Shown here piece by piece: positions 14,840-55,914 of a stretch of DNA of 64,000 nt (the first letter of the stretch is position 1; each line of letters opens with the position of its first letter). Below the pieces are notes generated by a model. The model was not told where the DNA came from, ran no database searches, and saw only the letters and a program-made list of their open reading frames with translations. The stretch is from Phaeosaccion multiseriatum (Eukaryota > Protista > Ochrophyta, other classes), in the NCBI GenBank assembly GCA_965112735.1, contig OZ218965.1, forward strand, positions 186,001 through 250,000, given 5' to 3'. A program made the position numbers and the translations under genes.

Positions 14840-14870
<31 letters not shown>

Positions 14871-20093: not shown

Positions 20094-23000
20094 ATGTCTA
20101 GCGTCCTCCAAGAGCAGCGTGATATACTCAAAGCCCTCTTTGACGCCACGAGCGGATCCGCTTGGCCTGACAAGGCTGGATGGGACACTGACGCATCTTT
20201 GGAGAACTGGTTCGGAGTAAGCCTTGAAAATGACTATGTGGTGAAGCTTGACCTCACAAGGAACGGCCTCGAAGGTAAGAGAGACATGGATCCCCTCTTC
20301 CTAAAGAGTACGTCGTATTCTAGAGTTTTTCCAGAATGCTGGCAATGTTCTTCCTCTCTTCTTCCCCCCACATGTGATGGGTCTAGATTATTCGGGACGG
20401 ACGAAGCAAAGCGGGGCAAGGGAAGGCATGAGGCAGCGGCATGACGCGATAGTCCAGCGACCCATTCGCGTCCCTTTCACTTCGTGTACCAATGAACTCC
20501 CCCCCGCTCCACAGGGAGTATTCCAAGGGAGCTTGGAAGTCTGAAGAAGCTGAAGGTTTTGGACCTCTCCTACAACAAGCTCACTGGTTAGTGGTACGCG
20601 TACCCGTTCGCGTCCCTTTCACTTGATGTTAGTGTGACCGAAAAACTCTCCTCCCATCCGCAGGGTGTATTCCAAGGGAGTTTGCAAGTCTGGAGAAGCT
20701 TGAGGTTTTGTTCCTCTTTGAGAACAATCTCTCTGGTAAGTAGTACCCACACCCCGTTCCCGTCCCTTTCACTTGAAGTTAGATGACCAAAGAACTTTCC
20801 TCCCATCCGCAGGGAGCATTCCACCAGACCTTGCAAGTCTGCAGAACCTTAGGCTGCTGGACCTTGACGGCAATCTGCTCACCGGTGAGTGGTACGCATA
20901 CCGTTCGCGTACCCCTGAATCGTTCGCGTCCACTTGACTTGATATTAGTCTGGCTGAAGAACTTCCCCACGTCTCAGGGAGTATTCCGCCGCAACTTGGA
21001 CAGCTGTCAAACCTTCGAGAACTTTGCCTCGACATAAACAACCCCTCTCATTTGATAAGTATGACCGAAGAGCTCTCTCCTCCCATTGCAGGGAGTATTC
21101 CACCCGAGCTTGGAGGTCTTCAGAACCTTGAGATGCTGCAACTCAGCCTCAATAAGCTCAATGGTGAGTGAGTGGGACGCGAACCCCTTTCATTTGATAT
21201 GAGTATGGCTGACCTTTCCTCCCATTGCAGGGAGCATTCCACCCGAGCTTGGAGGTCTTCAGAACCTTGAGAGACTGTACCTCTTCACCAACTTCCTCAC
21301 TGGTGAGTGGGACGCGAACCCGTTTGCGTGTTCGCGTCCCTTTCGCTTGATATCAGTGTGACCAAAGAACTTTCCTCCCATCCGCAGGGAGCATGCCGCC
21401 GCAACTTGGGCAGCTTTCAAACCTTCGAGAACTATCGCTTTACAACAATAATCTAGAAGGTGAGTGGTGCGCGAACCCGTTCCCGACCCTTTGACTTGAT
21501 ATGAGGGTGACCAAAGAACTTTCTACCCATCCGCAGGGAGCATTCCACCCGAGCTTGGAGGTCTTCAGAACCTTACGGGACTGTCCCTCGACTTCAATAA
21601 GCTCACTGGTGAGTGTAAGCACACCCGTTCGCGTCCCTTTCGCTTGATAGTCTTATAGCAAAGAACTTCCCCTCCGCCCCACAGGGAGCATTCCAAGGGA
21701 GCTTGAAAGTCTGGAGAACATTGAGCAATTGAGCCTCTACGACAACAAGCTCACTGGTGAGTGGTACGCACACCCGTTCGCGTCCCTTTCGCTTGATAAT
21801 CGTGTGACAACGAACTTCCCTCCTCTCCGCAGGGATTATTCCACCCGAGATTGGAAGTCTTCAGAAGCTTGGGTATTTGAACCTCTCCGGCAACAAGCTC
21901 ACTGGTGAGTGGTACGCACACCCTTTCGCGTCCCTTTCGCTTGATAGTCGTATGACAAAAGAACTTTCCCCATATCTCAGGGAGCATTCCGCCGCAACTT
22001 GGACAGCTGTCAAACCTTCAACAACTTTGGCTCAACGAGAACAGTCTAGAAGGTAGGTGGTACGCGCACCCGTTCGCGTCCCTTTCACTTGATATGAGTA
22101 TGACCAAGCAACCAACGTTCGTCCCATCCGCAGGGAGCATTCCATCCGAGCTTGGAAGTTTGGAGCAGCTCAGGCGCATCTACCTCAACAACAATAAGCT
22201 CACTGGTGAGTGGTAGCATGCCCGCTCGCGTCCCTTCCACTTGGTGCTTTGGTACGGAACATGGCGAGATTTTTGATGAGAGCCAATTCTGAGTGGTCCG
22301 GCTCCGTGGTGACGGGAAGTAAGCCCCTACCGCCTTAAAAGACCACCGCCCATCCTCCGCCGCTCTACTCGCGTCGTGCCCTTGCCTGCAGGCTTTGCAA
22401 CGGGCACGAGTGAAGATTGGATACTCAACATTTGCGGTGAGGGCGTGACTGGCTACACTAACTTTCAGGTGCATGGTAACCCGCTGCAGTACCCGCCATT
22501 TGGGGTGTTGGAGCAAGGACGGCTCATGACGCAAAAGTACTTCCAAGACTTGCGCAAGGGTCGACGGGAAGTAAGGAGCCTCAAGGTCATGCTCTTTGGA
22601 CCGACAACTGTAGGCAAGACCAGGTACGGTATACCCTCTTCGTCACAATGTCCCTTCTAGCCAACTACGATGGGCGACAGAGGAGTTCGAGAGAACGGGA
22701 GAGGAGGGGAATTTTTCTGTCGTCATCACCCGCTGCTCTTGATTAGCTTCCAACATGCCTCCCCCCCCCCCCGACGTTTCGTCCCTTGCTTGTGTCAGTT
22801 TGATGCGTAGCATCATAGAAGGGCGGCCCACAGCAACGGAGAACAGCAAGAAGCCGTCGACGGTCGGTGTTCACGTCCGGGGCTGCGAGCTGGAGAGACC
22901 GGGGCGTTCGGTTATGTCGTGTCGCTTCTTCGACTGTGGTGGTCAGCAAGACTATCACGGCCTCAGCAGCATGTTTCTCACTGAAGGAGCGGCCTACCTG

Positions 23001-26000
23001 CTGGTTTGGAGTCCGCCGGACGATTTGGAAGGCGCTGAGCTAAAGCCGTTCCTTGAAATGCTCCGGCACGGCGCTTCGAAGTCCACGGCGCTCCTTGTAG
23101 CGAATCAATGCGACCGGTGGGAGGAGGCTCAGGGCGATTTGAAGGCACACTGTGGGCGTATGCACGCGCATGTGAAGGAGGAGCTGCGGGAGGGGCGCAT
23201 AGCGTTGGGGGAAGAAGTACACATGACGAGCTGCAAGGAGGAGGAAGGGCGGCGGGAGAAGGAGCTGAACGTGTTGGTGGAGACGTTAATGGGCCTAGGC
23301 CAGACGTTCGTAATGGGTCCCTTGCTCGAGAAAGCAGTGACCCTGGTGGGCGACATGGCAGAGAAGCACATCTTCCTGACAATGAGTGAAGTGGAAGAAG
23401 CCTGGAAGGTGAAGCTGCAGGAGGACGGAGTCGAAGACGAGGACAAGGAGCTCGCGGATGTGATGTTCCAGTGCGGAGTCAAAATGCTGTAAGTACGGGG
23501 GGGCTTCGGGGCGAGTGCGTGCGGAATTGAGCGCGCCTATGGGCTGGGTATGGTTAAGACTCTCAAGGTTTTGTTGGCGTGATGACGGTTCGGAACAAGG
23601 CCAAAGCTTATATATTGAGCCCGAGGCAAGAGGGAACGTAAGCACCCGTGGGGGGCGGGGGTAGCTACATCGCTTTCCCGTGCCTCTCTCATTGTATGTA
23701 TCTCTCGGTGGCGTGCAGGGAAAGGAACGGAAGACTTGTGGTGGCTGGAGACGTGGAGAAAGGTGCAGCCGTTGTTCTTACGGAGGCGGCCTTGTTTTCC
23801 CAGTTGATCAGTCCGCTCCTGACTCCGGCCGGTGACATCATTACCGACGGTGGTGAAGTGCTACTGGGTCGCAACAAGGTGTGTGTGTGTGCGTGTGCTT
23901 GAGGGAGATGGCAAAGAAAGAGAGGAATCAATAGAAGTTGGCCAGAGTTTAGTGATGTTGTGTCGTCCGTCTGACATGCCTCCCCCCTTGTCCACACGTT
24001 TCTCTCTGTTTGCCTCCATCTGCCTTATCCTCTGCATTGTGCTTTATTTGTGCCCCCCACCGAAGGGACTTCTGACACCCGCACTGAAGCCGAAGCGACA
24101 AGTGGACGGCGCCTATGGACTTGAACTGGACAGGAATGCTGCCAACAAACTCAAGAAGGATGGGGTGCTGACGAGTGGTTTTGCCGGATCGGTCTGGAAC
24201 GCTGTTCTTGTTCGTCACGGGGGGGGCGGGGGAAGGACTTTCGACCAACAACACGTGAGGGCTCTGCTGGGAAGGTTGGTGGACCTGGGCATCATTTTTG
24301 AGAAGGCTGAGCACGATAACGCCCCGGGAGGGGTCAATGGTGGTGGCACTGCTGCCAAGGAGCAAGAGCTCCAATTCGTGGTCTCCCTCCGCATGCCAGA
24401 TGCGATGGACAGCTCGAACGAGCGAGCGCAGAAATTAAAAAAAGCGGCAGATGATATCAGTCAGAATATGAAGGAAGGAGAGTACTTGAAGCAGGTGTCC
24501 CTCAAGCTGGAGCGCCCCCCTTCCCCCGGGACCATTGCCAGGCTGGTGTCTACTCTCTCCACCAAGGGACTCGGTGAGGTGGCGGTTGGCTGGAGGCAAG
24601 GGGCGTTGTTCGTCGATGCCCAACAAGCGTACATGGCCTTCGTCAGCTATGACTGGACGGAGCAACGCTTGTACCTGAAGGTGGCTGGTCAGTGGGAAGA
24701 AGGGGAGAAGCAGGTGAGGAAGAGGAAAGGGCGTCATATGCGTGGCCTGATGTACTCACCGTGCCGTCACTCTGACTCTCCAAGTTTTGCTTTTCCTCGT
24801 TTTTATTTGCACTTCGTCAACACTGCATCCACCAAGTGCGACTCTTTCCCGACCGTTGCGATGGGCATGCTGCTCCGGCACACGGTCCGCCATCTCTCCT
24901 CCCACAAGTGCTCGTGGAAAGAAGTGTACGTGACCAAGGATCCCCTGAACGAAAAGTGGGGGCCGCTCTGTGAGGTAAGAGAGAGGAGGGGGGGGTTGTT
25001 GGTTGTACACACCTTGCTTGTTTAGTTAACAGTTGTCGAGGCTTCTCTCGTGCCGGATAAGTGTTGCTCTCAGCTTGCGTGCGGCTCACATACATCATAA
25101 CCTGTGTGTTTTGGGACGGAACAGGGAGACCTTCAGGAATTCGGGTGTGTGCTGGATCCATCGCGGAAAGCTGATGCAGGCACAAACGAGCGGGGCCTGC
25201 TGTCTGAATATGATGTCGAGCGGCTGATCGCTACACCCGTCTTGAGCCCCCGGTGGGCGCCGCCGACTCTGGCCACGAAGTGCTTCAGAGGCGAGTGGAA
25301 GACTGTGTGCGACAAGTTTGAAGGGGAGGCTTTCGTTACACTCCGGACTTGTGTGAAAGGTTTCGAGAAATACCAGGTACGAGGCTCAGTAGGTCTGTGT
25401 TGACGACTTTGCTCTCCGGGCAAAGCTTTGTGTTCTGATGCCGACGAATTCCTCTTGTCCCTCTCTTGTCTCAAAGGAATCCCTGCAGAAGGCGCGAGAC
25501 GGGCTTCCCAACGTCGAGACTATTGAAATGAGCGACGGTAAGGGGTACCAAGTCTTCTTGAGCCACGCCGGGCCGGAGAAGCGGGGCATTGTGTATCTGC
25601 TTCACAGATGTCTGTGGCAGAGAGGAATTCCGACTTTCTTGGACGAGGAAAGCCTGCAGGCAGGAGACCGCGCCGACCACAAGATGCTCCACGTTGCCCG
25701 CACCGCCCCGATTGGCGTGGTTGTGCTGAGTCCGTCTTTTGTGTGCCGAGAGTGGCCTCTTGAGGAGATGCAAATCTTCATGGACAGGGCGGAGGAGGAG
25801 GAAGCGGCGCTGGTGCCGCTATTCTTCGGGCTGACGGTTGAGGAATGCTGGGACACGGGCAAATTAGAAGATAACCATCCCGGCGTGAAGAAGACATGGG
25901 GAGAGTGGAGCAAAGGGGAGGGAGGGGATTGGGATTGGCTTGAGAAGGACAAGTTCAAGACAGCGGACGAGCTTGCGAAGGACCTGCTGGGGCGTGTGGG

Positions 26001-26109
26001 TACACACACGGGTCTCCGCGATGACCACCAAGAAGATCTGTTTGCTTTCGCCAAAAGAGTGGCGAACAAGGTGGAAAGGGTATTGACGACGTTACATTCC
26101 AAGTCGTAA
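20094..26109 (+). CDS. ROCO-TIR protein copy A: LRR N-cap + 12 LRR units + ROC GTPase + COR-like + TIR
   Basis: N-cap exon 20094-20274 (DILKALFDATSGSAW...W.TDASLENWFGV). LRR exons start at 20515, 20664, 20813, 20978, 21092, 21231, 21388, 21537, 21685, 21833, 21981, 22134. Exon 22392-22623 has GNPLQYPP and G1 GPTTVGKT|S. Exon 22799-23488 has G2 STVGV, G3 FFDCGGQQDYH, G4 VANQCD, G5 TSCK. COR-like exons 23719-23878, 24066-24713, 24837-24974, 25125-25376. TIR exon 25477-26109 (YQVFLSHAG...FLDEESL...VVVLSPSFVCREWPLEE). Confidence 0.9.
20515..22205 (+). repeat. LRR cassette array A: 12 units of 72-nt exon + ~77-nt conserved intron
   Basis: Exon consensus G-SIPPELGxLxxLxxLxLxxNxLT-G. Intron consensus GTGAGTGGTACGCACACCCGTTCGCGTCCCTTTCACTTGATATGAGTGTGACCAAAGAACTTTCCTCCCATCCGCAG. 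Confidence 0.95.
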
Positions 26110-26286
26110 CCCTAAGCACTCTTTGTCTGCTTACTCCCCAGCCACCCTCACTCAGAGAGAGAGAGAGAGGCGCCAAAGCTTTTTACGGGCAGAACGAGAG
26201 TAAAATATATTGAAACAATGCCTCGGGTTTCCGATTGGGCATGAACGAGTGGCCTACTCCACAGTCCCCCCTTAACACCTGTTGAG

Positions 26287-26560
26287 GGTATCCACCTTGT
26301 ACGAAGGATCTTAAATCACTCCTTCTGCTTCTGTGTAAGACGGACAGGCAAGCCCCCCCCCCCTCCCCTCCCCTCCCCTCTCGAGTCTCTCGCGTCTTCC
26401 GCCGCTCTGCTCGGCAAGCGAGTGAGCGGTAGCGCTATTTTGTATTCTGCACATGCTGGAGAGCATAAGGACCGCCATCGTCGTGTTCAGGCCCTTGCTG
26501 CTTCTGTTGTATCACCACCTGCTGCTACTGCTGCTGCTGCTGCTGTATCACCAACTGCCA
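26287..26560 (+). repeat. ~0.3-kb non-coding direct repeat (also ~31965-32280, ~40777, ~46498, partial ~54227-54480)
   Basis: Shared GGTATCCACCTTGTAYGAAGGATCTTAAATCA...GTGTAAGACGGACAGGCAAGCCCC...GAGCGGTAGCGCTATT...GCACATGCTGGAGAGCA. Confidence 0.85.
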
Positions 26561-27503
26561 TCGTCGTGCCCAAGGCTCTTGATGAGGCGTCCGAGGCCAA
26601 AGCCGCAAAAGCGCCGCAGCAACACACCGAGTGTCCCCTGAGCCTGCCCCTGACCTTGACCTTGACCCTGACCCTGACCTGGAGCATGGGCCTGACCCTG
26701 ACCCTGACCCTGACCTTGACCCTGACCCTGACCCTGGCCCTGACCCCGAGCATGAGCCTGGCCCTGAGCATGAGCCTGGCCCTGACGTTGACCCTTGGGC
26801 CCTGACGTTGGCCCTTTGGCCCTGACGTTGGCCCTTGGGCCCTGATCGCTCAGATACGCTCCAGGGGCTTGATGCCGAGCAGCTCGAAGCATGTGCCCAT
26901 GGCTCGCTTCGTGGCTTGGCACAGCAGGAGGCGCCCGTTCTGTATCACCAACACGGGAGCGTGGGGGGTGGGGGTGTCAGGACAGCGGGTAGGGGGTTTC
27001 AGGACAGTGGGTGGGAGGTGCCCATTTCGTATCACCGACGGGACAGGGCCATGCATACAGCAGCAGTTGGTGATACAGCGTCAGAGACATTGTGTCACAG
27101 GCATTATCTTAGAGTCAGTCTAGCACCCACAGCAAGTGCCCCACTCAATCCCTCACATACTCACTCACTCACGGACTTAATCACCCACCCACTCACCCAC
27201 CCACTCACTAGTAACTGACTGACTCACTCACTCACTTCCTCACTGCCTCACTTACTCACTCACTGCCTCACTCACGCACGCACTCACTCCCTCACGCACG
27301 TACTCACTCAATCACTCACGCAATCACTCACTCACGCACGTACTCACTCACTCACTCACGTCCACTGCCATCCACTGCCATCCCTCCCTCTCCGGGCGAT
27401 GGGGCGCTCTCTCGTTTGTTCTGCTCCTGCCCCTTGCCATCCGCTGCCATCCTCCCTCTCTGACCCCCCAACGCCCCTGCTCTCCCCCCCCTCCTGTCCT
27501 CAG

Positions 27504-29006
27504 CTGGACCCCGACATGCTCAAGATGTCGTTTCCCGAGTGGAAGCTTTACCTCAAGACGTGCCCCAACAACGATGCCGGCAACAGGACTAGGCTCGAGA
27601 GCGGCTTCATGATCGAAATTGCACAGGTCAGTCAGTCAGTCGGTCAGTCGGTCAGTCAGTCAGTCAGTCAGTCAGTCAGTCAGTCAGTCAGTCAGTCAGT
27701 CAGTCAGTCAGTCAGTCAGTCAGTCAGTCAGTCAGTCAGTCAGTCAGTCAGTCAGTCAGTCGGTCGGTCAGCCAGTAAGTCAGTCAGTTCTCGAGTCTGT
27801 CAGTCAGTCAGTGAATCAGTCAGTCAGTGAGTCAATCTGTCAATACGTTGGTCAGCCAGCGCTGTCAGTAGCGCAGTCAGTGACACGCCTCCCTGTCCTG
27901 ACACATTGCTCTGTACCCGCTGTCCTGACACCTTGCATTGTACCCGCTGTCCTGACACCTTGCATTGTACCCGCTGTCCTGACACCTTACACTGTATCCG
28001 CTGACCCCAAGCTTGACCCCGTGACATTGACATTGACATTGACATTGACATTGACATTGACATTGACATTGACATTGACATTGACATTGACATTGCCGCT
28101 CTCTACCCCCTGCCTCGTGCGTGCTCAGGAGGTGGCTATGGAGAGGCAGAAGAACGTGTGGGTCGATGGCAGCCTACGGGATGCAGAGCGGTATGAGGTG
28201 CGTGCGTGCGTGCGTGCGTGCGTGCGTGTGTGTGTGTGTGGGGTCGCCTGGGATGAGGGCTGCGCACTCACCCCGCCACAGGGGGAGGGAAAGATGGACA
28301 TGCAGGTAGAGAAAGAGAGAGGGAGAGAAAGAGAGCGAGAGAGAGAGAGCGAGAGAGCGAGAGAGAAAGAAAGAGAGAGAGAGAGAGAGAGAGCCAGAGA
28401 GAGAGAGAAAGAAAGAGAGCCAGAGAGAGAGAGAAAGAAAGAGAGAGAGAGAGAGAGAGCCTTCCGTCTGCAGACAGAAGCGCATTGGCCCCTTCTGACA
28501 GAGCGTGAGTATGTGCGTGTGTGTGTATGTGTGTGTGTGTATTTGTGCCCGCGCAGATCGTGTTCCGACAGATCCGCTTGAAGCGCCCCCACTACCGCAT
28601 CGCCATTCTCTACGTGTTCGCCGACCGCGAGTGTGTGTTTCGAAGGGCCAAGGAGCGCGGCGAGCAGACGGGCCGTTTCGTGCCCGAGGAGGACATCGAG
28701 GACTCGCTGCAGAAGGTGCCCCTCACCGTAGAGAAGCTCATGCACAAGGTGAGTGAAACTGTCGGCAGCAGCGGGGCGGGCAGGGCCATGCACGGGTGGG
28801 GTTGTTTGGGTATACACAGGTTGGGCATACACAGGTTGGGCATACACAGGTTGGGCCACCGAGGAGTGATAAGCACTATAGGGGGAGAGTAAGCCCTTCC
28901 CACCAAAGCCCTTCCCGCCAAAGCTCTTACCGCCATGACCCTTCCTGCCGTGACGTTTCATGACGTATGTCTCTGTCGCTCCACTGCCGAATGCCGCGCC
29001 CGCGGG

Positions 29007-29053
<47 letters not shown>

Positions 29054-29512
29054 TTGTGTGTATGCGTGTGTGTGCGTGTGTGTGTGTGTGTGCGTGTGTG
29101 TGTGTGTGCATGCGCAGGTGGGCTTCGTGGCGTGGATCGAGAACTCGGAGAATAAGGACACGTCCACCTCGGACCCCAAGCTCGTCAAGTACATGGAGAG
29201 CGAGAGCCCAGACCAGAGTACAGACCAGAGCAGCCAGCCGGGCAGTGACACGCGGCAGAGCGCAGGCAGACAGGTGCGGGGGGGGGCGCCGCGAGAGGGG
29301 TCAGTCAATCAGTCAGTCAGTCAGTCAGTCAGTCAGTCAGTCAGTCAGTCAGTCAGTCAGTCAGTCAGTCAGTCAGTCAGTCAGTCAGTCAGTCAGTCAA
29401 GTCTCTCAGTCAGTCAATCAGTCTGTCAGTCAGTCAGTCAGTCAGTATCAGTCAGTCAGTCAGTCAATCAGTGAAGTCAGTCAATCAGTGAAGTCAGTCA
29501 GTCAGTCAGTCA

Positions 29513-29551
<39 letters not shown>

Positions 29552-29588
29552 AGTCAGTCAGGCCCTCAGTCAGTCAGTCAGTCAGTCA

Positions 29589-29623
<35 letters not shown>

Positions 29624-42740: not shown

Positions 42741-42772
<32 letters not shown>

Positions 42773-43554: not shown

Positions 43555-43599
<45 letters not shown>

Positions 43600-44048
43600 T
43601 TGTGTGTATGCGTGTGTGTGCGTGTGTGTGTGTGTGTGCGTGTGTGTGTGTGCATGCGCAGGTGGGCTTCGTGGCGTGGATCGAGAACTCGGAGAATAAG
43701 GACACGTCCACCTCGGACCCCAAGCTCGTCAAGTACATGGAGAGCGAGAGCCCAGACCAGAGTACAGACCAGAGCAGCCAGCCGGGCAGTGACACGCGGC
43801 AGAGCGCAGGCAGACAGGTGCGGGGGGGGGCGCCGCGAGAGGGGTCAGTCAATCAGTCAGTCAGTCAGTCAGTCAGTCAGTCAGTCAGTCAGTCAGTCAG
43901 TCAGTCAGTCAGTCAGTCAGTCAGTCAGTCAGTCAAGTCTCTCAGTCAGTCAATCAGTCTGTCAGTCAGTCAGTCAGTCAGTATCAGTCAGTCAGTCAGT
44001 CAATCAGTGAAGTCAGTCAATCAGTGAAGTCAGTCAGTCAGTCAGTCA

Positions 44049-44087
<39 letters not shown>

Positions 44088-44124
44088 AGTCAGTCAGGCC
44101 CTCAGTCAGTCAGTCAGTCAGTCA

Positions 44125-44159
<35 letters not shown>

Positions 44160-46330
44160 AGTCAGTCAGGCCCTCAGTCAGTCAGTCAGTCAGTCAGTCA
44201 GCCAGTCAGTCAGTCAATCAATCTGTCAGTCAGTCAGTCCCTGAGTTCCTCAGTACCGTCATGCGTGCTCTGCTGTGCTCTGATGAAGTGTACTCTCTCC
44301 CTCTCTATATCAGAAGCCTCCCCCACCCCCCCCCCTCTCTTCCTCTCCCTTTCTCTCTCCTTCTCCTCACGCCCCCCCCCTTGTGTGTGTCCACCGTCTT
44401 CCTCTCGCGGCAGTGGGTGATGAACGAGAGGGGCAGCTGGGAGGAGATTTCGGACCGATTTGCCATACTCGCGGAGCTCGATCAGGTGAGAAGTGGTACA
44501 GCGCAATAAGCTAATGAGTGTCTGGCCGTGGCCCCCAGTAGCTACTAAGGGTTGGAAAGGGAAAAAGGGATACCCAGTGAGCACTAAGGGGCATTTATTG
44601 ACTTAATTGTCAGCACCAAGGGAGGCACAGGGGGGTCCTGACACGAGGCACCAGGGTGTGGGGGAGGGGGGTGTCCTCGGTGAACCTTCTCAGCACGTGC
44701 TGCTCGGGAGGGAGGTTGACCAAATTCCTCTTTTTGGTGCTGGTGTCAGCTCTCTCATGCCCATACACATGTTTCTGCTCCGTGAAACGCTGGTTGGTGT
44801 CAGGACCCGGCCACATGGCGGTGGTGGCTGAAGGAGCAAGTGGCCAAGAACGACGTCGTGGTGTTCGGCAAGAGCTACTGCTCCTTCAGGTTTGTGCTCT
44901 CGTTGTTGGCCATTCGGCACTCCTTGTGGAGAAGGTCTTTTCCTCTCGCCTGGCTGCCTCCTGATCTCGTCCTCCTCAAGTCCTCCTTAGTATCTGTGCC
45001 CACCACCCTTACTCCCACTCCCTCCTCTCGACGCCCCCCCTCCCTGTCGCAGCAACCGCTTGTTGGACTTGTTGCACAACCTTAAGGTGGAGTTCACTGT
45101 GGTGCAGGTGAGAGCTTCTCGGGAGGGGCAGGCAGGCAAGCGAATGGGGAGATAGGGAGCGACAATGTAGAGAGAGAGAGCCCTTGGGATCGATGCAACA
45201 GATGACAACTGTCTGGACCACCAACGCCTCTCTTCCGGCCGTGGGGTGCCATCGTCTTCGCTCACACGCCTGAATAGTTCTCTCTCTTTCTGCCTTACTC
45301 ATGTGTCTCTCTATCCCTCTCTGTCTGCCTCTCTGTTTGTCACTCTCTCTCTCCTTCTCTCGTCCGCTCTCTTTTGGCAGTTCGACGAGCTCCCCGGGGG
45401 GGGTGTCCCCCTGCAGCTCGAGCTCACCAAGATGACTGGCATCGCCACAGGTAAGGCATATGGGTCATCGGTGCTAAGGCATATGGGCCATCAGTGCTAA
45501 GGCATATGGGCCATCGGTGCCCCCCGAGGCCCGATGAAAGGAGAGGGTGTCCGGTGTGTGGTGTCGAACCCCCCCCCCTGACGCTCCCTCCTCCCTCCTC
45601 CCCCCTCTCTTGTCCAGTGCCCCAGCTCTTCAGCCACGGGCGCTGTTTGGGCGGCTGCAGCTCCTGTTTCGCGTTGCACGAGAAGGGTCTTCTCGAGCTC
45701 GCACTCAGCGGACCCCTCACAGCGCAAAGCCCTCCACAGGAGGGAAGTGGGGGGGGGGGGGTGGTGAGGAGGAAGCTCAGACTGAGGCAAAGAAAGTCCA
45801 TCAGCAGCTCCCCCTCTCCAAGCCGCAGTCACGAGAACCTCGCTCTTCTTGCGAGCAGTCCTTCCGTAGAGGCGCTGATGGGGGTGGGGGCGGCAGGAGG
45901 GGCAAGGGCATTGCATGGGTCAGGGGCAGGGGCACCCACCGGGGGACCGACGCAGGAAGGGAGGCGGGCAACAGTGGGGCCGTACGGGGGGGAGACGAAG
46001 CAGTGGGTGGTACAGCAGTTGGGCATACAGCACCTCTCAATGGACAACGACGAGAGCCTCCTTCCGAGCGGGGAGCGCTTGGAGACGCCGCAGCAGGGGA
46101 AGCACGAGAGTGTCGTCCCCAGCGGCGACAGGCGTATAGGCAGGCAGTCCAGCGGGAGGTGTATGGGCCGGGGTGGTCATCAGCTGCAGTGCCTGCCGCC
46201 CGTTAAGGAGGAACGGCCGGCAGGTCAGCGAACGCCCACCCCCGTAAGCCAACAAACGCCCTCCTCCCCAGTAAGCCAACAAACGCCCTCAGGTCAACCC
46301 ACCAGCTCGGACGAGGCCCGGCCCAAGTGA
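41994..46330 (+). pseudogene. 5'-truncated copy 2 of the zeta-kinase/glutaredoxin gene
   Basis: Duplicate of 27504-31797; last exon open to ...DEARPK* at 46330. Confidence 0.75.
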
Positions 46331-48352
46331 GGGCCCAAGAATCAATAGTAAAAAGGAGGTTGGGAAGTCTCGAGCAGAGGCGTATGGGCATATTAGAGCA
46401 GAGGCGTATGGGCATGGCGGAGCCGTGGGGCGCGGACGGCGGCCTTGGTCGCGCGGGCTCAGGCGAAGGGGGTGGGGGATGTGTAGATAAGCGAACTGGT
46501 ATCCACCTTGTATGAAGGATCTTAAATCAAAAATCAAAGAGAACGAACACATTCAAACTGAACTACTCCTTCTGTGTAAGACGGACAGGCAAGCCCCCCT
46601 CCCCTCTCGAGTCTCTCGCGTCTCTCGCGTCTTCCGCCGCTCTGTTCGGCAAGCGAGTGAGCGGTAGCGCTATTTTGTATTTTGCACATGCTGGAGAGCA
46701 GGAGGACCGCCATCCTCGTGTTCAGGGCCCTTGCTGCTTCTGGTTTATCACCACCTGCTGCCACTGCTGCTGTATCACCAAGTGCTGCTTCTGTTGTATC
46801 ACCAACTGCTGCTGCTGCTGCTGCTGCTGTTGAATGCTGCGCATCCGAGAGTACCCTGGCCGCCAACGTTGTCGCTGCGCCGAGGGCTACGGAGAGGCCG
46901 GGTGTGTGCAGTGCGAAGTCGCTCGGGTCCTGGCCTGTATCTGTAGTGCCCCCTTTGCGACATTGATATCGGCGTCATCGACATTGATATCGGCATCATC
47001 GACATTGATATCGGCATCATCGACATTGATATCGGCATCTCTGGCCCTCGCCACTGCGCTGCTGGGGACCTGTACTGCCCCCTTTGCGGCGCATCACCTT
47101 CCACTCCCCCCCCCGCTACATCCTTGTAAGCCGAAAAGGGGGAACAGCTGATGTGTGTCGTCCATCTTGTCCTTCCTGCATGTCTGTGTCTAGGAGGTCG
47201 AGCAGCACCTCCAGCACCCCGACTCGCTGCCGCAGCGCCCTGCCGTCAAATCGCTGATGACCCTGCGCTTCCCCTTCTGCTCAACTTCCCCCTAGGGGTT
47301 TGGCCACATCTCACTGCCGGCCTGCTCGTCCAGAAAAGCATGATGAACTACAGCCAGTCGCCCTCTCGTCGAGCAGAAAGTCTTTGATCCTTCTATTCAT
47401 AATCAAGGCAGCGTGCTCATCGACGCTCTGGTGGCTCTCCCCGGTGACTGCCTTCTGCCTTGCAGCTGCGAGCTGACCCTTCGAGAAACCCTTTCACCCT
47501 CTGCATCGCACCTCTGCGTCCACCCCACTACTGCTGGGGCGTCGTTCCTGGCGCCAGCAACGACTTGCTCTCGTGCGTGGCCGGTGACGCGCTTATCCTC
47601 CAGCACCTCATCTATCCTGGCTGGCCGGGTCCATGTGCAGGGCAGCGAGACCTCCACCTGGGGTGGCGTACAGCTCGCAAGCCACCCAACGACCGCATCA
47701 CCCGCGTACGAGGGCCCGCCACTGGACCTCTGTACCCACAGCCTTTACCACTGCCGCCTTCCCCGCAGCCCAGACCCTCCGACTCTCTGCCTCAGCACAG
47801 GGGAGGGGTAAGCCAGGCCGCCCCGCAGCGCCCGAAACGTGGAATACGCCCTATCCGGGAGCTTGGCCTGCGCCGCTGCCTTCTTCTCGTTCGCCGACGC
47901 CTCTGGCTGCTCCCAGCCAGATGCGGGCTCAATGCCCTGTGCCAGCTGCAAGCTTGGAGGGGTGACAGCAGTGCTTCCCTTGTGCATGCTGAGGGCGATT
48001 GCAAGATTCTCCTGCGCTATCACGCCTCGCCTCCGCCTGTCGAGCCGACGCACAATGTGCTCCTCCAATCAATGCCGGCTTCGTAAACGTGGCCCGCCTC
48101 CTTCCGTTTTTCCTCCCCGCTGCCTGTCTTTCATCTCCCCGAGAGTAATCCCGTTCGCACCAGCCTTGTTAGCAATAATGCTTCTCTATCTGTCTCACCC
48201 TTTTTTTTCCCGCGTCACGGTCACGTCCATTTGTGAACTTCATGGATTCAAAGCTCGCTCACTTTTTATGCTGACGTATCCTGACGCCGTGCAGACTAAA
48301 CACTGAGACCAGGGCGAGCTTTTATCAGTGTTTGCGTGTTACGAAGGTTACG

Positions 48353-51300
48353 ATGTCTATTGTCCTCGAGGATCAGCGTAGAATACTCACAGCCGTCTTT
48401 CTCGCGACGAGCGGACCCGCTTGGTCTTACAAGGCAGGATGGAACACGGACGCTTCTTTGGAGAACTGGGTCGGAGTGCGCGTTGAGAATGACTATGTGG
48501 TGGAGCTTGACCTCGGAAGAATCGGCCTCAAAGGTAGGAGAGACGTGATTATGGTTGTTGCGCCTTACGTCCTGAAGAGTACGTCGTATTCTAAAGTTTT
48601 TCCAGAATGTTGGCAATGTTCTCTCCTTTTATTTGTTCTTTTATTCATGCAACAACACGTGATCGGTCTAGAATATTCGGGAAGGACGAAGCAAAGAGGG
48701 GCGAGAGATGTGTGAGGCAGGGGCATGATGTGGTAGTCCAGCGACTCGTTCGCGTCCCTTTCACTTCGTGTACCAAAGAGCTCCCCCCGCTCCGCAGGGA
48801 GGATTCCACCAGAGCTTGAAGGTCTTCAGAACCATGAGAGACTGTCCCTCAACAACAATCAGCTCACTGATGAGTGGCACGAGCACCCGTTCGCGTCCCT
48901 TTCACTTGATATGAGTATGACCAAGGAACTTTCCTCCCATCCGCAGGGAGCATTCCACCCGAGCTTGGAAGTCTTCAGAACCTGACGGTGCTCAGCCTGT
49001 TGCGCAACCAGCTCTCCGGTGAGTGATACGCACACCCGTTCGCGTCCCCTTGACTTGATATGAGTGTGACCAGAGAACTCTCCTCCCATCCGCAGGGAGC
49101 ATTCCACCCGAGCTTGGAAGTCTGGAGAAGCTTGAGAGACTGAACCTCTCCGACAACGCGCTCACTGGTGAGTGGTACGCACACCCGTTCGCGTCCCTTT
49201 CACTTGATATGAGTGTGACCAAGGAACTTTCCTACCATCCGCAGGATGCATTCCAAGGGAGCTTGGACGCCTGGAGAAGCTGAAGGTATTAATCCTCTCC
49301 TACAGCAACGTCACTGGTAAGTGGTATGCGGACCTGTTCGCGTCCCTTTCACTTGATATGAGTGTGACCAAGGAACTTTCCTACCATCCGCAGGATGCAT
49401 TCCAAGGGAGCTTGGAAGTCTGGAGAAGCTTGAGCACTTGAGTCTCGCTGGCAGCAAGCTCACTGGTAAGTGGTACGCACACCCGTTCACGTCCCTTTCG
49501 CTTGATATGAGTTTGACCAAAGATCTTTCCTCCCATCCGCAGGGAGCATTCCACCCGAGCTTGGAAGTCTGAAGAAGCTGAAGGTTTTGAAACTCTCCCA
49601 CAACAAGCTCACTGGTGAGTGGTACGCGTACCCGTTCGCGTCCCTTTTACTTGATATGAGTATGACCAAAGAGCTTTCCTCCCATCCGCAGGGAGCATTC
49701 CACCCGAGCTTGGACGCCTGGAGAAGCTGGAGGAATTGCGCCTCTCCCACAACAAGCTCACTGGTAAGTGTTATGCGAACCCGTTCGCATCCCTTTTACT
49801 TGATATGAGTATGACCAAAGAACTTTCCTCCCATCCGCAGGGAGCATTCCACCCGAGCTTGGAGGTCTCGTCCAGCTCGACCTCCTGTACCTCCAGTACA
49901 ACCACCTCTCCGGTAAGTGGTACGCACACCCATTCGCGTCCCTTTCACTTGATATGAGTTTGACCAAAGAACTTCCCCTCCGCTCCGCAGGGAGCATTCC
50001 AAGGGAGCTTGGAAGTATGGAGGAGCTTGCGATAGTGGACCTCTCCAACAACAAGCTCACCGGTGAGTGGTTGCATGCCCGGTCGCGTCCCTTTCACTTG
50101 ATACTTGGGTAGGGAACATGGCGAGATTTTCGATGAGCCAATTGTGAGTGGTCCGGCTCCCGCGGCGACGTACAGCACAGCTTGAGCCACTGCCCACTTC
50201 CGCCTTTAAAGACCACCGCCCGTCCTCCACCGCTCTACTCGCGTCGTGCCCTTGCCTGCAGGCTTTGCAACCGGCACGAGTGAAGATTGGATACTCAGAT
50301 TTTGCCCCAACAAGTGGGGCCACATTCGGGTGGAAGATAACCCGCTGCAGTACCCACCAGTTGGGGTGTTGGAGCAAGGACAGCACATGACGCAAAAGTA
50401 CTTCCAAGACTTGAGTGAGGGTCGAAGGGAAGTAACGAGCCTCAAGGTCATGCTCTTAGGACCCACAACAGTAGGCAAGACCAGGTGCGGAATGCCCTCT
50501 TCGTCACTTTGTCATGTCTAGCTGACTACGATGCGCGACAGAGGAGTTCGAGGGCAGGAGAGAGGAGGGGAGAAATGCTAAGACACACACGTCTCGTGAT
50601 TACCCGCTGCTCTTAATTAGCTTCCAACGTCCCTCCCTCCCCCTCCCCGACGTTTCGTCCCTTGCTTGTGTCAGTTTGATGCTTAGCATCATAGCAGGGC
50701 GGCCCACAGCAACAGTGAAAGGAGAGAACCCGTCGACCGTCGGTGTTGACATCAATAGCTACGATCTAAAGGGACATGTAGGGATATTTAGGGCCATATA
50801 TAACCTTCTATTTGGCTACAGTGCGCCGAGGGTGTCGTGTCGCTTCTTTGACTGCGGTGGTCAGCAAGACTATCACGGCCTGAGCAGCATGTTCATGACA
50901 GAAGGAGCTGCCTACCTGCTGGTTTGGAGTCCGCCCGACGATTTGGAAGGCGCTGAGCTAAAGCCGTTCCTTGAAATACTCCGGCACGGCGCTTCGAAGT
51001 CCACTGTGCTCCTTGTAGCCAATCAATGCGACCGGTGGGAGGAGGCTCAGGGCGATTTGAAGGCACGCTGTGAGGTTATTCACGGTGCTGTGAAAGAGAA
51101 GCTGCGGGAGGGGCGCATAGCGTTGGGGGAAGAAGTGCACATGACGAGCTGCAAGGAGACGGGAGGGGGGGAGAAGGAGCTGAAGATGATGGTGGAGACG
51201 TTAATGGGCCTAGGCCAGACGTACGTAATGGGCCCCTTGCTCGAGAAAGCAGTGACCCTGCTGGGAGACATGGCAGAGAAGCGCACCTTCCTCACAATGG

Positions 51301-54031
51301 GTGAAGTGGAAGAAGCCTGGAAGGTGAAGCTGCAGGAGGACGGAGTCGAAGACGAGGACAAGGAGCTTGCGGATGTGATGCTCCAGTGCGGAGTCAAAAT
51401 GCTGTAAGTACGGGGGGGCTTCGGGGCGAGTGCGTGCGGCATTGAGCGCGCCTATTGGCTGGGTGTGGTTTTGTCGGCGTGATTACGGTTCGGAACAAGT
51501 TGTATCGAGCCCGAGGCAAGAGGGAACCTAAGCACCCGTGGGTGGCGGGGTTAGCTAAATCGCTTTCCCGTGCCTCTCTCATTGTATGTATCTCTCGGTG
51601 GCGTGCAGGGACAGGAACGGAAGACTTGTGGTGGCCGGAGACGTGGAGAAAGGTGCAGCCGTTGTTCTTACAGAGGCGGCCTTGTTTTCCCAGTTGATCA
51701 GTCCGCTCCTGACTCCGGCCGGTGACATCATTACAGACGGTGGTGAAGTGCTACTGGGTCGCAACAAGGTGTGTGTGTGTGCGTGTGCTTGAGGGAGATG
51801 GGAACATGGGAACGAGAGAGGAAAGACTGGAACTTGGCCAGAGTTTAGTGATGTTGTGTCGTCCGTCTGACACGTCTCCCCCCTTGCCCACACTTTTCTC
51901 TTGTTTGCCTCCATCTGCCTTATCCTCGGTATTGTGCCTTGTTTGTGCCCCCCACCGAAGGGACTTTTGACACCCGCACTGAAGCCGAAGCGACAAGTGG
52001 ACGACGGCGACTCTGGACTTGAACTTGACAGGAAGGCGGCCAACAAACTCAAGAAGGATGGCGTGCTGACGAGTGGTTTTGCCGGATCCGTGTGGAACGC
52101 TGTTCTTGTTCGTCACGGGGGGGGCGGGGGAAGGACTTTCGACGAAGGACACGTGGAGGCTCTGCTGGGAAGGTTGGTGGACCTGGGCATCATTTTTGAG
52201 AAGGCTGAGCACGACAATACCCCGGGAGGGGGGGTTGGTGGTGGTGGTGGCACACCTGCCAAGGAGCAAGAGCTCCAATTTGTGGTCTCCCTCCGCATGC
52301 CAGATGCGATGGACAGCTCGAACAAGCGAGCGCAGGCATTAAAGAATGCGGCAGATGCGATCAGTCTGTCGATGAAGGAAGGGGGTTACTTGAAGCAGGT
52401 GCACCTCCAGCTGGAGCGCCCCCCTTCCCCCGGGACCATTGCCAGGCTGGTGTCCACTCTCTCCACCAAGGGACTCGGTGAGGTGGCGGTTGGCTGGAGG
52501 CAAGGGGCGTTGTTCGTCGATGCCAAAGAGGCGTACATGGTCTTCGTCAGCTATGACTGGGAAAACCAACGCTTGTACCTGAAGGTGGCTGGTCAGTGGG
52601 AAGAAGGGGAGAAGCAGGTGAGGAAGAGGAAAGGGCGTCATATGCGTGGCCTGATGTACTCACCGTGCCGTAAATCTGACTCTCCAAGTTTTGCGTACAC
52701 TCGTTTTTATTTGCACGTTGTCAACACTGCATCCACCAAGTGCGACTCTTTCCCGACCGTTGCGATGGGCATGCTGCTCCGGCACACGGTCCACCATCTC
52801 TCCTCCCACAATTGCCGGTGGAAAGCCGTATACGTGGTCAAGGACATCAAGAATCCCCTGAAAGAAGTGTGGGGGCCGCTCTGTGAGGTAAGAGAGAGGA
52901 GGGGGGCGTTGTTGGTTGTACGCCTTGCTTGTTTAATTAACAGTTGTCGAGGCTTCTCTCGTGCCGGATAAGTGTTGCTCTCAGCTTGCGTGCGGCTCAC
53001 ATACATCATAACCTGTGTGTTTTGGGACGGAAACAGGGAGACCTTCAGGGATTCGGGTGTGCGCTGGATGATGATGGAGGCACAAACGAGCGGGGCCTGC
53101 TGTCTGAATATGATGTCGAGCGGCTGATCGCTACACCCGTCTTGAGCCCCCGGTGGGCGCCGCCGACTCTGGCCTTGAATCCCTTTCCAAAGGTGTGGAC
53201 GAGGGTCCTCGAAGATTTCAAAGAGGAGACAGACGAGGAAGAGTTGAAGGGACTTTTCAAACCACTACGGACTTGTGTGAAAGGTTTCGAGAAATACCAG
53301 GTACGAGGCTGCTGCGAGCAAAAGTTAAAAGCAGGTCTGTGTTGACGACTTTGATCTCCGGGCAAACCTGTGTTCTGATGCCGACGAATTCCTCTTGTCC
53401 CTCTCTTCTCTCGAAGGAACGCCTGCGAGAGGCGCGAGCTGGGCTTGACACCGGCGACGAAAGTCTTGCAATGAGGGACGATAAGGGGTACCAGGTCTTC
53501 CTGAGCCACGCCGGGCCGGAGAAGCGGGGCATTGTGTATCTGCTGTACAGATGTCTGTGGCAGAGAGGAATTCCGACTTTCTTGGACGAGGAAAGCCTGC
53601 AGGCAGGAGACCGCGCCGACCACAAGATGCTTCACGTTGCCCGCACCGCTCCGATTGGCGTGGTAGTGCTGAGTCCGTCTTTTGTGTGCCGAGAGTGGCC
53701 TCTTCAGGAGATGAACATCTTCATGGACAGGGCGGCGAAGGGGGAAGCGGCGCTGGTGCCGCTATTCTTCGGACTGACGGTTCAGGAATGCTGGGATACG
53801 GGCAAATTAGAAGACAACCATCCCGGCGTGAAGAAGACATGGGGAGAGTGGAGCCAAGGAGATGGAGGGGATTGGGGCTGGCTTGAGCAGGGGAAGACAG
53901 CGGACGAGCTTGCGAAAGACCTGCTGGGGCGTGTGGGTGAACACACGGGTCTCCGCGATGACCAGCAAGAAGATCTGCTTGCTCTCGCCAAGAGAGTGGC
54001 CAACAAGGTCGAAAGGGCATTGATGAAGTGA
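48353..54031 (+). CDS. ROCO-TIR protein copy C (9 LRR units, diverged paralogue of A)
   Basis: N-cap 48353-48533. LRR exons start at 48798 (donor-dead), 48947, 49096, 49245, 49394, 49543, 49692, 49841, 49991. Cap/G1 exon 50262-50484 (GPTTVGKT), ROC exon 50675-51403 (FFDCGGQQDYH), COR exons, TIR with WPLQEM. Stop TGA 54029-54031. Confidence 0.88.
48798..50062 (+). repeat. LRR cassette array C (9 units)
   Basis: Exon starts spaced exactly 149 bp for units 1-8, and 150 bp to unit 9. Confidence 0.95.

Positions 54032-55882: not shown

Positions 55883-55914
<32 letters not shown>

What the first reader, a model, noticed from the sequence alone, without database searches (positions are those of the whole stretch)
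20094..54031. Tandem LRR-ROC-COR-TIR receptor cluster with a modular, recombining LRR cassette system
Seen: three genes with N-cap, 12/17/9 single-exon LRRs, ROC GTPase, COR-like region and C-terminal TIR, showing copy-number change, a chimera, dead and fused cassettes and a hypervariable ligand face. Known: one-LRR-per-exon ROCO genes with exon shuffling are described in brown algae (Ectocarpus) as candidate immune receptors, and TIR domains are immune NADases in plants, animals and bacteria. Inference: an NLR-analogous sensor-switch-effector that uses a GTPase switch instead of NB-ARC, with a built-in diversification mechanism. The TIR effector and the base-level record of recombination are the parts I cannot match to a described locus.
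Basis: partly seen in the sequence, partly recalled or inferred. Interest (0 to 1): 0.9.

Follow-up and report, generated by a model that had tools for sequence, protein, structure and literature searches.

The report
Algal LRR-GTPase-TIR receptor gene cluster
Three neighbouring genes of an unnamed alga-like eukaryote each join a leucine-rich-repeat sensor built from one-repeat exons to a ROC-COR GTPase and a plant-type TIR domain, and the middle gene is a very recent crossover hybrid of its two neighbours; this is a new eukaryotic variant of receptor types already described in brown algae and bacteria.

Summary
There are three intact plus-strand genes: 20094-26109, 33820-40601 and 48353-54031 (1241, 1337 and 1183 aa, all introns GT-AG). 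Each encodes an N-terminal cap, 72-nt phase-1 LRR exons (12, 17 and 9 cassettes; 34 spliceable, 4 dead), a ROC GTPase with intact G motifs, a divergent COR and a C-terminal TIR.

The TIR passes Pfam thresholds, folds like plant NLR TIR domains and keeps the catalytic glutamate. The middle gene is a chimera. Its crossover maps to 4 bp (35332-35335) inside an LRR exon. The two 14.5-kb copies differ by one substitution plus microsatellite indels. About 2x k-mer depth in DNA runs argues against an assembly artefact.

- One-LRR-per-exon shuffling ROCO genes are published for Ectocarpus.
- LRR-ROC-COR-TIR proteins are described and abundant in bacteria.
- A TPR-ROCO-TIR is noted in the red alga Chondrus.
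- Chrysoparadoxa australica has the same gene architecture, hidden by split annotation.

The scan noted a further LRR-ROCO-TIR cluster elsewhere in this genome (unchecked). An immune sensor-switch-effector role is plausible but inferred. Transcription of these exact genes is not shown. Verdict: new variant of a known kind, moderate interest.

The parts
20094..26109 (+). Gene A: LRR-ROC-COR-TIR, 19 exons, 1241 aa, intact ORF
   Evidence: Spliced model with all GT-AG introns and no internal stop
20094..20274 (+). Gene A exon 1: 60-aa N-terminal cap, no signal peptide or Cys pair evident by eye; ends in phase 1
   Evidence: Sequence read directly. No Pfam LRRNT_2 match
20515..22205 (+). Gene A LRR array: 11 spliceable 72-nt phase-1 exons (starts 20515, 20664, 20813, 21092, 21231, 21388, 21537, 21685, 21833, 21981, 22134), separated by 67-85-nt conserved introns (207 nt across the dead cassette)
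20978..21058 (+). Dead (truncated, fused) cassette of gene A. It has an acceptor and an open frame, but its donor and the first half of its intron are deleted. The only in-frame GT would leave a 33-nt intron
   Evidence: nhmmer matches only model positions 2-100 of 132
22392..23488 (+). Gene A linker and ROC GTPase (exons 22392-22623 and 22799-23488). G1 GPTTVGKT at 22598-22621, G3 DCGGQ at 22932-22946, G4 NQCD at 23103-23114
   Evidence: Pfam Roc 34.6 bits; motif positions
23719..24974 (+). Gene A COR-like region (exons 23719-23878, 24066-24713, 24837-24974). COR-B signature FVVSLRMP...PSPGTIARLV...GWRQGA
   Evidence: hhalign against bacterial COR-A/COR-B profile: 89% probability, E 2.3e-6, template COR-B columns. 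Pfam COR models do not match
25477..26109 (+). Gene A TIR exon (includes the stop). Catalytic Glu codon at 25765-25767 (E1128)
   Evidence: Pfam TIR and TIR_2; PDB sequence matches to AtTIR, AbTIR, Roq1 and L6; AF2 pLDDT 89.9; Foldseek top hits are plant NLR TIRs
33820..40601 (+). Gene B: chimeric LRR-ROC-COR-TIR, 23 exons, 1337 aa, 15 spliceable LRR exons plus 2 dead cassettes. Catalytic Glu codon at 40257-40259
35308..35379 (+). Hybrid LRR exon of gene B carrying the crossover. Positions 35332-35335 (GTCT) are the only bases shared with both parents
   Evidence: Three-way alignment: B equals C up to 35335 and B equals A from 35332
20837..35335 (+). Tandem duplication, copy 1 (14,499 bp): 3' part of gene A, the spacer and the 5' part of gene B
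   Evidence: Global alignment with copy 2: 1 substitution and 11 indels, all in microsatellite or homopolymer runs
35332..49868 (+). Tandem duplication, copy 2 (14,537 bp): 3' part of gene B, the spacer and the 5' part of gene C
   Evidence: About 2x unitig depth of the duplicated parts in DNA runs X1-X3
48353..54031 (+). Gene C: LRR-ROC-COR-TIR, 16 exons, 1183 aa, 8 spliceable LRR exons plus 1 donor-dead cassette. It has a 14-aa in-frame insertion in ROC. TIR exon is 53417-54031; catalytic Glu codon at 53708-53710
   Evidence: Intron 51404-51608 is removed in a spliced contig of a close relative in run X5
34265..34336 (+). First cassette of gene B with its donor GT changed to AT (same in gene C at 48798-48869). 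The coding frame is intact but the exon is probably skipped

Best explanation
This is a tandem cluster of three nuclear genes of an unnamed eukaryote. Its nearest database relatives are the ochrophyte alga Chrysoparadoxa australica and, more distantly, brown algae.

Each gene encodes what appears to be a cytosolic ROCO-family protein (no signal peptide seen by eye). Its parts, in order, are:
- an N-terminal cap;
- 8 to 15 plant-type 24-residue LRRs, each on its own 72-nt phase-1 exon;
- a ROC GTPase with intact G1, G3 and G4 motifs;
- a divergent COR dimerisation region;
- a C-terminal plant/bacterial-type TIR domain with the catalytic glutamate.

Shown here: the gene structures, the domain identities, the TIR fold, and diversifying change on the concave LRR face. 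Also shown is the cluster's history. An older duplication gave genes A and C (dS about 0.15). A very recent unequal crossover followed, between LRR exon 3 of A and LRR exon 8 (eighth cassette) of C. It created the 14.5-kb tandem repeat and the hybrid gene B.

Inferred mechanism: the LRR surface binds a non-self or danger ligand. This changes the nucleotide state and the dimer or oligomer state of ROC-COR, which brings TIR domains together so that they cleave NAD+ and trigger a defence or cell-death response. That would make the protein a GTPase-switched analogue of plant TIR-NLRs and a eukaryotic counterpart of bacterial LRR-ROC-COR-TIR conflict proteins. New receptor specificities arise by ordinary homologous misalignment of the near-identical intron-exon cassettes. 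No dedicated recombinase is needed.
For: - Intact ORFs of 1183-1337 codons across 16-23 exons with canonical splice sites.
- Pfam Roc and TIR above their curated cutoffs.
- TIR sequence matches to AtTIR (E 5.6e-11), the NADase AbTIR, Roq1, L6 and RUN1.
- AF2 model with pLDDT 89.9, whose best Foldseek matches are plant NLR TIR domains with TM about 0.8.
- The Glu aligned to the catalytic Glu is invariant across 36 relatives and present in all three genes.
- COR-B profile match.
- Exactly 38 cassettes, of 21 distinct kinds. Entropy peaks at the solvent-exposed x positions. In those codons positions 1+2 are less conserved than position 3 (0.37 vs 0.60), and the reverse holds in framework codons.
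- Crossover mapped to 35332-35335, with the two copies differing by 1 substitution.
- Unitig depth in DNA runs is about 2.2-2.4x for the B/C-shared 5' part (242 and 227 against 89-114 in X1). Depth is about 2-2.7x for A/B-type tail unitigs relative to C-only unitigs.
- dN/dS of A against C outside the LRRs is 0.55-0.72.
- The same architecture in C. australica: N-cap, 72-nt phase-1 LRR exons, and a linker exon that also starts with GF, followed by ROC-COR-TIR.
- A spliced, exon-only contig set in run X5 from a close relative uses the predicted intron 51404-51608.
- Published context: PMC3341825, PMC11378527 and PMC8195603.
Against: - No functional data of any kind.
- Transcription of these exact three genes is not shown. 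The X5 contigs differ from gene C at about 4-5% of sites and are a mosaic of A-like and private letters.
- Pfam COR-A and COR-B models do not match, and an AF2 model of the COR exon failed (pLDDT 42). COR therefore rests on one profile-profile hit and on motif resemblance.
- dN/dS of about 0.66 indicates only weak constraint.
- The hybrid junction itself was not checked in reads.
- The 4 dead cassettes and the exact splice pattern are predictions.
- A retained catalytic Glu does not prove NADase activity.
Confidence: 0.6

Rival explanations
1. Gene B and the second 14.5-kb copy are an assembly artefact: a false tandem duplication of one locus. The real genome would then hold only genes A and C.
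For: The two copies differ by a single substitution and 11 indels, all in homopolymer or microsatellite runs. That is the error profile of long-read assemblies.
Against: Short-read unitigs unique to the B/C-shared 5' part have about 2.2-2.4x the depth of gene-C-only unitigs in three runs. A/B-type tail unitigs are also about 2x or more. A false duplication would give 1x. The junction lies in register inside an exon and yields an intact ORF.
Confidence: 0.1
2. The proteins are real, but the TIR acts as a non-enzymatic homotypic adaptor, or the proteins work in abiotic-stress, developmental or self/non-self (allorecognition) signalling rather than pathogen sensing.
For: Many brown-algal ROCO genes respond to non-biotic stresses (PMC11378527 abstract). 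Animal TIR domains are mostly scaffolds. No pathogen-related data exist for this locus.
Against: The catalytic Glu and the F-x-S-H, D and W positions are invariant across relatives. The closest structures are enzymatic plant and bacterial TIRs. Diversifying change concentrated on the LRR face together with birth-and-death clustering is the usual signature of recognition receptors.
Confidence: 0.2
3. The cluster is a decaying, untranscribed set of pseudogenes left over from repeat-driven rearrangement.
For: There are 4 dead cassettes. dN/dS is fairly high (0.55-0.72). About half of Ectocarpus ROCO loci are disrupted (PMC3341825). No exact-match transcripts were seen.
Against: All three ORFs are intact over 3.5-4.0 kb of coding sequence with every splice site canonical. 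In-frame indels only separate A from C. GTPase and TIR catalytic motifs are intact. Close relatives are transcribed and spliced as predicted.
Confidence: 0.08

Closest known systems
Ectocarpus / brown-algal type-I LRR-ROCO genes (Zambounis et al. 2012, PMC3341825; Teng et al. 2024, PMC11378527)
   Same: N-terminal LRRs of 24 residues, one per exon. Conserved introns, exon shuffling, variable repeat number, hypervariable solvent-exposed positions, local clusters of recent duplicates, dead exons, and a ROC GTPase followed by a COR that Pfam usually misses.
   Different: Brown-algal ROCOs are reported as plain LRR-ROC-COR, with an unnamed C-terminal domain, a transmembrane tail, a peptidase or DUF900. 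None is reported with a TIR. In my alignment the Ectocarpus and Laminaria proteins carry a different C-terminus. Sequence similarity to this locus is low. No non-coding-strand cassette reservoir is present in this window.
Chrysoparadoxa australica proteins CAM9660036.1, CAM9907097.1 and CAM9880587.1 ('unnamed protein product')
   Same: They are the nearest TIR relatives (48-53% identity) and have ROC...TIR in one protein. Their contigs carry an N-cap and 72-nt phase-1 LRR exons (GSIPAELGQL...) upstream on the same strand. A phase-compatible acceptor opens onto a linker that also starts with GF.
   Different: It is a different species (contig GC 50% against 58% here). Overall identity is only about 35-50%. 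The database annotation splits the LRR part from the ROC-COR-TIR part, and no paper I could find describes them.
Bacterial LRR - AP-GTPase (ROC) - COR - TIR conflict proteins (Kaur, Iyer, Burroughs and Aravind 2021, PMC8195603)
   Same: Same domain order: fast-evolving N-terminal LRRs, ROC, COR and a C-terminal effector that can be TIR. Examples are P0161 and P0163, which have Pfam LRR, Roc, COR-A, COR-B and TIR_2. Many bacterial clusters of this kind are in the ESM Atlas.
   Different: They are prokaryotic and intron-less, with canonical COR-A and COR-B that Pfam recognises. Sequence identity to the ROCO-TIR family of this locus is low (27-31% to its C. australica relative P0002). There is no exon-cassette organisation.
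Plant TIR-NLRs (RPP1, Roq1, L6, RUN1)
   Same: LRR sensor plus nucleotide switch plus TIR effector. The TIR fold is closest to these proteins and the catalytic Glu is conserved. Unequal crossing-over in LRR-coding repeats making chimeric paralogues is the classic mode of R-gene cluster evolution (established knowledge).
   Different: The switch is a Ras-like ROC GTPase with COR, not an NB-ARC STAND ATPase. The domain order is reversed (LRR N-terminal, TIR C-terminal). It is therefore an analogue, not a member.
Chondrus crispus Sel1/TPR-ROCO-TIR (XP_005712860.1)
   Same: A eukaryotic algal ROCO protein with a C-terminal TIR.
   Different: The sensor is Sel1/TPR repeats, not LRRs. It is a red alga, and the TIR is more distant (E 8e-13).

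Membership tests
ROCO GTPases | ROC (Ras of complex) GTPase domain with G1, G3 and G4 motifs | tested here: met
   Pfam Roc scores 34.6 and 31.9 bits against a cutoff of 27. GPTTVGKT, DCGGQ and NQCD are present in all three genes.
ROCO GTPases | COR domain directly C-terminal of ROC | tested here: inconclusive
   Pfam COR-A and COR-B give no match. hhalign of the family alignment against bacterial COR-A+B matches the COR-B columns (89% probability, E 2.3e-6). COR-A was not demonstrated. The AF2 model of the exon was unusable (pLDDT 42). The C. australica relative P0002 (residues 1-612) matches ROC-COR models structurally with TM 0.5-0.62. Teng et al. also find PF16095 in only 18 of 111 brown-algal ROCOs.
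Brown-algal type-I LRR-ROCO (exon-shuffling) genes | One 24-residue LRR per exon of constant length and symmetric phase, with shuffling and copy-number change | tested here: met
   34 exons of 72 nt, all phase 1-1; 12, 17 and 9 cassettes; a chimeric exon.
Brown-algal type-I LRR-ROCO (exon-shuffling) genes | C-terminal region as in Ectocarpus ROCOs (conserved unnamed domain or transmembrane tail) | tested here: not met
   The C-terminus here is a TIR. The Ectocarpus and Laminaria hits P0154 and P0155 have a different tail and no TIR Pfam hit.
TIR domain superfamily (enzymatic plant/bacterial type) | TIR sequence profile and flavodoxin-like TIR fold | tested here: met
   Pfam TIR 50.6 bits and TIR_2 47.8 bits. 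Fifteen PDB TIR sequences match at E below 1e-3. Foldseek probability is 1.00 and TMt about 0.8 to RPP1, L6, RUN1 and RPV1.
TIR domain superfamily (enzymatic plant/bacterial type) | Catalytic glutamate | tested here: met
   E1128 (A), E1224 (B) and E1077 (C) align with the Glu of WCLDEL in AtTIR and of AbTIR. The column is invariant in 36 sequences.
TIR domain superfamily (enzymatic plant/bacterial type) | NAD+ cleavage activity | not testable with these tools
   Needs a biochemical assay.
NLR / STAND immune receptors | Central NB-ARC or NACHT STAND NTPase | tested here: not met
   No NB-ARC or NACHT hit in any exon. The switch is a Ras-like ROC. It is an analogue only.
Plant LRRNT_2 N-terminal cap | Match to Pfam LRRNT_2, with the Cys pair | tested here: not met
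   No LRRNT_2 hit at E up to 1 for exon 1 of A or B. There are no cysteines in the cap.
Bacterial AP-GTPase/COR conflict systems with TIR effector | LRR - ROC - COR - TIR order in one polypeptide | tested here: met
   Same order as P0161 and P0163 and as described in PMC8195603. However, this locus is eukaryotic with 15-22 spliceosomal introns, so it is a counterpart and not a member of the prokaryotic systems.

The most novel reading that the evidence does not exclude
LRR-ROCO-TIR proteins are a functional, GTPase-switched class of intracellular immune receptor in ochrophyte algae, conserved at least between this organism and Chrysoparadoxa. On ligand binding, ROC-COR-driven assembly activates a plant-like TIR NADase. 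Repertoire change by cassette recombination is fast enough to differ between strains, or even between somatic cell lines as Zambounis et al. speculated.
Probability: 0.3. Interest if true: 0.8.

Novelty: new variant of a known kind. Interest (0 to 1): 0.58.

Why it matters
Intracellular immune receptors of plants and animals use STAND ATPases as the switch. If ROCO-TIR proteins work as inferred, an independent eukaryotic lineage solves the same problem with a Ras-like GTPase driving a plant-type TIR enzyme. That would link the bacterial LRR-ROC-COR-effector conflict systems to algal immunity.

It would also give the long-standing candidate status of brown-algal ROCO receptors a testable output, namely NAD+ cleavage. 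The locus offers an unusually clean, essentially mutation-free example of how unequal crossover inside one-repeat exons makes a new receptor in a single step. Finally, it shows that the database annotation of C. australica splits such genes, so the family is under-counted.

Tried and rejected
- AF2 of the 216-aa COR exon with a 9-sequence alignment gave pLDDT 42 and was not used.
- phmmer of that exon against PDB sequences found nothing meaningful.
- Pfam found no LRRNT_2 in the N-cap and nothing in the small exons. It also found nothing in ten ORFs of the 7.7-kb spacers or in other long ORFs of the window, apart from an IPPT fragment.
- The organism could not be named. Run names are coded, the best library protein is only 53% identical, and the C. 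australica contig has a different GC content.
- A word-based homologue search with P0002 found only 14 hits.
- Logan unitigs are too fragmented in the LRR arrays to read exon skipping or alternative splicing. Most non-GT-AG 'joints' there are repeat artefacts.
- The 119-nt 'skip' at 50713-50833 in DNA runs looks like a gene-A/B-type contig laid on gene C across the 14-aa insertion region, not a deletion.
- Retention of the 123-nt intron 24714-24836 would also keep the frame open. I rejected it because it would insert 41 residues between the last COR-B strand and the following helix, and because the intron has strong donor, pyrimidine-tract and AG signals.

Full report
**What is there**

The window is eukaryotic DNA of about 58% GC. 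Self-comparison shows a large direct repeat and three arrays of a 149-bp unit.

Reading the sequence and assembling exons by script gave three complete genes on the + strand, with no internal stop and GT-AG at every intron:
- Gene A, 20094-26109: 19 exons, 1241 aa.
- Gene B, 33820-40601: 23 exons, 1337 aa.
- Gene C, 48353-54031: 16 exons, 1183 aa.

Each gene starts with a 181-nt exon encoding a 60-aa cap without an evident signal peptide. A run of 72-nt exons follows, all in phase 1. Each encodes one 24-residue repeat, G-S-I-P-x-E-L-G-x-L-x-x-L-x-x-L-x-L-x-x-N-x-L-T, and they are separated by 67-85-nt introns.

A nucleotide profile of the cassette finds exactly 12, 17 and 9 copies. All are on the + strand and none lies elsewhere in the 64 kb.

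Four cassettes are not spliceable as normal exons:
- A truncated cassette has lost its donor and half its intron (20978-21058 in A, 35473-35553 in B).
- The first cassette of B and C has AT where the GT donor should be (34265-34336 and 48798-48869).

**Domains**

- ROC. Pfam places Roc above its curated cutoff in the 690-nt exon. The P-loop GPTTVGKT lies at the end of the preceding exon. DCGGQ and NQCD are present in all three genes.
- TIR, by sequence. The last exon matches Pfam TIR (50.6 bits against a cutoff of 21.3) and TIR_2. It matches solved TIR domains by sequence: AtTIR at E 5.6e-11, the NADase AbTIR, Roq1, L6, RPV1 and RUN1.
- TIR, by structure. An AlphaFold model built on 36 relatives has pLDDT 89.9. 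Its best Foldseek matches are plant NLR TIR domains with TM about 0.8 normalised to the target.
- Catalytic residue. The glutamate that aligns with the catalytic Glu of plant and bacterial TIR NADases is invariant in the alignment. It is encoded at 25765-25767, 40257-40259 and 53708-53710.
- COR. The roughly 450 residues between ROC and TIR give no Pfam COR hit. An alignment of this region with Chrysoparadoxa, Ectocarpus and Laminaria ROCOs shows the COR-B signature (FVVP-RLP ... PPG-L--LVA-C ... W--GV). It matches a profile of bacterial COR-A+B at 89% probability, E 2.3e-6, over the COR-B columns. An AF2 model of the exon alone failed, so COR-A is not demonstrated.
- N-cap. The cap resembles the plant LRR N-cap pattern but gives no LRRNT_2 match.

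**Recombination record**

Gene B is base-for-base identical to C from upstream of its start codon to 35335, and identical to A from 35332 onward. The exchange point is therefore the 4 bp GTCT inside LRR exon 35308-35379, and the hybrid exon stays in frame.

The two resulting 14.5-kb units (20837-35335 and 35332-49868) differ by one substitution and 11 length changes, all in microsatellite or homopolymer runs. Such identity could mean a false assembly duplication.

However, in three DNA runs of the same organism:
- unitigs from the B/C-shared 5' part have 2.2-2.4 times the depth of unitigs unique to the gene-C tail;
- unitigs carrying gene-A/B letters in the tail are also at about twice that depth or more.

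This fits two copies of each part, that is, a real and very recent unequal crossover between A and C. The junction itself was not examined, because the single read-laying run was used on gene C.

A and C are older paralogues: about 91% nucleotide identity in the tail, dS about 0.15, dN/dS 0.55-0.72, and only in-frame indels between them.

**Diversification**

The 36 full-length cassettes fall into 21 distinct sequences. Entropy is highest at repeat positions 14, 15, 17, 19, 20 and 22, the x positions of LxxLxLxxNxL.

In those codons, first and second positions are less conserved than third positions (0.37 against 0.60). Framework codons show the opposite (0.83 against 0.66). The flanking introns are visibly more alike than the variable codons. 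This is the pattern of diversifying selection on the ligand face, with homogenised introns serving as recombination substrate.

**Expression**

Run X5, from another sample, covers exons only. It contains a contig that removes exactly the predicted intron 51404-51608 (GT..AG). Its letters differ from gene C at about 4-5% of sites: 16 of 30 differences equal gene A and the rest are private. So a close allele or paralogue is transcribed and spliced as predicted, but transcription of A, B or C themselves is not shown.

**Relatives and literature**

An exhaustive profile search with the TIR exon found 158 proteins at E up to 1e-10. The best reached only 53% identity.

The top three are 'unnamed protein products' of Chrysoparadoxa australica carrying Roc and TIR. 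Their contigs carry an N-cap and 72-nt phase-1 LRR exons just upstream on the same strand. On L003 a phase-compatible acceptor opens a linker that begins with GF, as the linker here does. The whole architecture is therefore shared, and the database annotation splits it.

Further TIR neighbours are plant multi-TIR proteins and metagenomic NB-ARC-WD40-TIR proteins.

What is already published:
- The cassette organisation, shuffling, hypervariable positions, clustered recent duplicates and dead exons are described for Ectocarpus ROCOs (PMC3341825). They are also described for four brown algae (PMC11378527). Those brown-algal ROCOs are called simple LRR-ROCO, and TIR is mentioned only for a Chondrus TPR-ROCO-TIR.
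- Bacterial LRR + AP-GTPase + COR proteins with C-terminal TIR and other effectors are described as conflict systems (PMC8195603). I confirmed two metagenomic examples. Several large bacterial clusters of this kind are in the ESM Atlas.
- No paper in the library combines 'TIR domain' with brown-algal ROCO terms.
- Notes of this scan report another LRR-ROCO-TIR cluster, and an LRR-ROC-COR-peptidase gene, elsewhere in the same genome. I could not check either.

**Verdict**

The sensor-switch-effector interpretation is the best available reading but is inferred. It also follows published predictions rather than opening a new category. What is new is a eukaryotic, intron-cassette LRR-ROCO family that carries a plant-type, apparently catalytic TIR. 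It is shared with Chrysoparadoxa, and this locus adds a near-pristine record of a receptor made by one crossover. I rate it a new variant of a known kind and of moderate interest.

Noticed in passing
window 26600-29710 and 41100-44240: The spacers after genes A and B are packed with long microsatellites: (GTCA) about 100 copies at 29300-29703, plus (GTCA)54, (CACT)55, (AG)n, (TG)50, (TGACAT)12 and (CCCTGA)27. All 11 length differences between the two duplicated copies lie in microsatellite or homopolymer runs, most of them in these spacers (3 are within the gene body/3' end at 22761, 24988 and 26154).
   Followed up: partly
window 14436-14624 (+): An exon-sized match to the tRNA isopentenyltransferase family (Pfam IPPT, E 6e-13) inside ORF 14370-15209. 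It is the only other recognisable coding fragment found among the long ORFs of the window that were scanned.
   Followed up: no
window 1586-2192 vs 55239-55904: An inverted repeat of about 670 bp at 85% identity, flanking the whole region. It may be a dispersed repeat or a transposon fragment.
   Followed up: no
window 54232-55163 vs 26325-27271 / 40815-41761: The 3' flank of gene C is 86% identical to the 3' flank of genes A and B. Upstream similarity between A and B/C starts only about 40 bp before the ATG (20055 against 33781). The older A/C duplication therefore carried the 3' flank but almost no 5' flank.
   Followed up: partly
L003 55-3416 (Chrysoparadoxa australica CAXMZZ020002094.1); also L001 and L002: The public annotation calls the N-cap and LRR exons (55-856) and ROC-COR-TIR (1029-3416) as two genes. 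A phase-1 acceptor at 978/979 joins them into one LRR-ROC-COR-TIR ORF. L001 and L002 likewise have 72-nt LRR exons upstream of the ROC-COR-TIR models.
   Followed up: partly
window 50832-52545, run X5: Exon-only contigs from a second sample are a mosaic. About half of their differences from gene C are gene-A letters and the rest are private. This suggests another allele or paralogue shaped by exchange between family members.
   Followed up: partly
window 50775-50832: Gene C has a 42-nt (14-aa) in-frame insertion in the ROC domain between the switch region and the DxxG motif, relative to A and B.
   Followed up: partly
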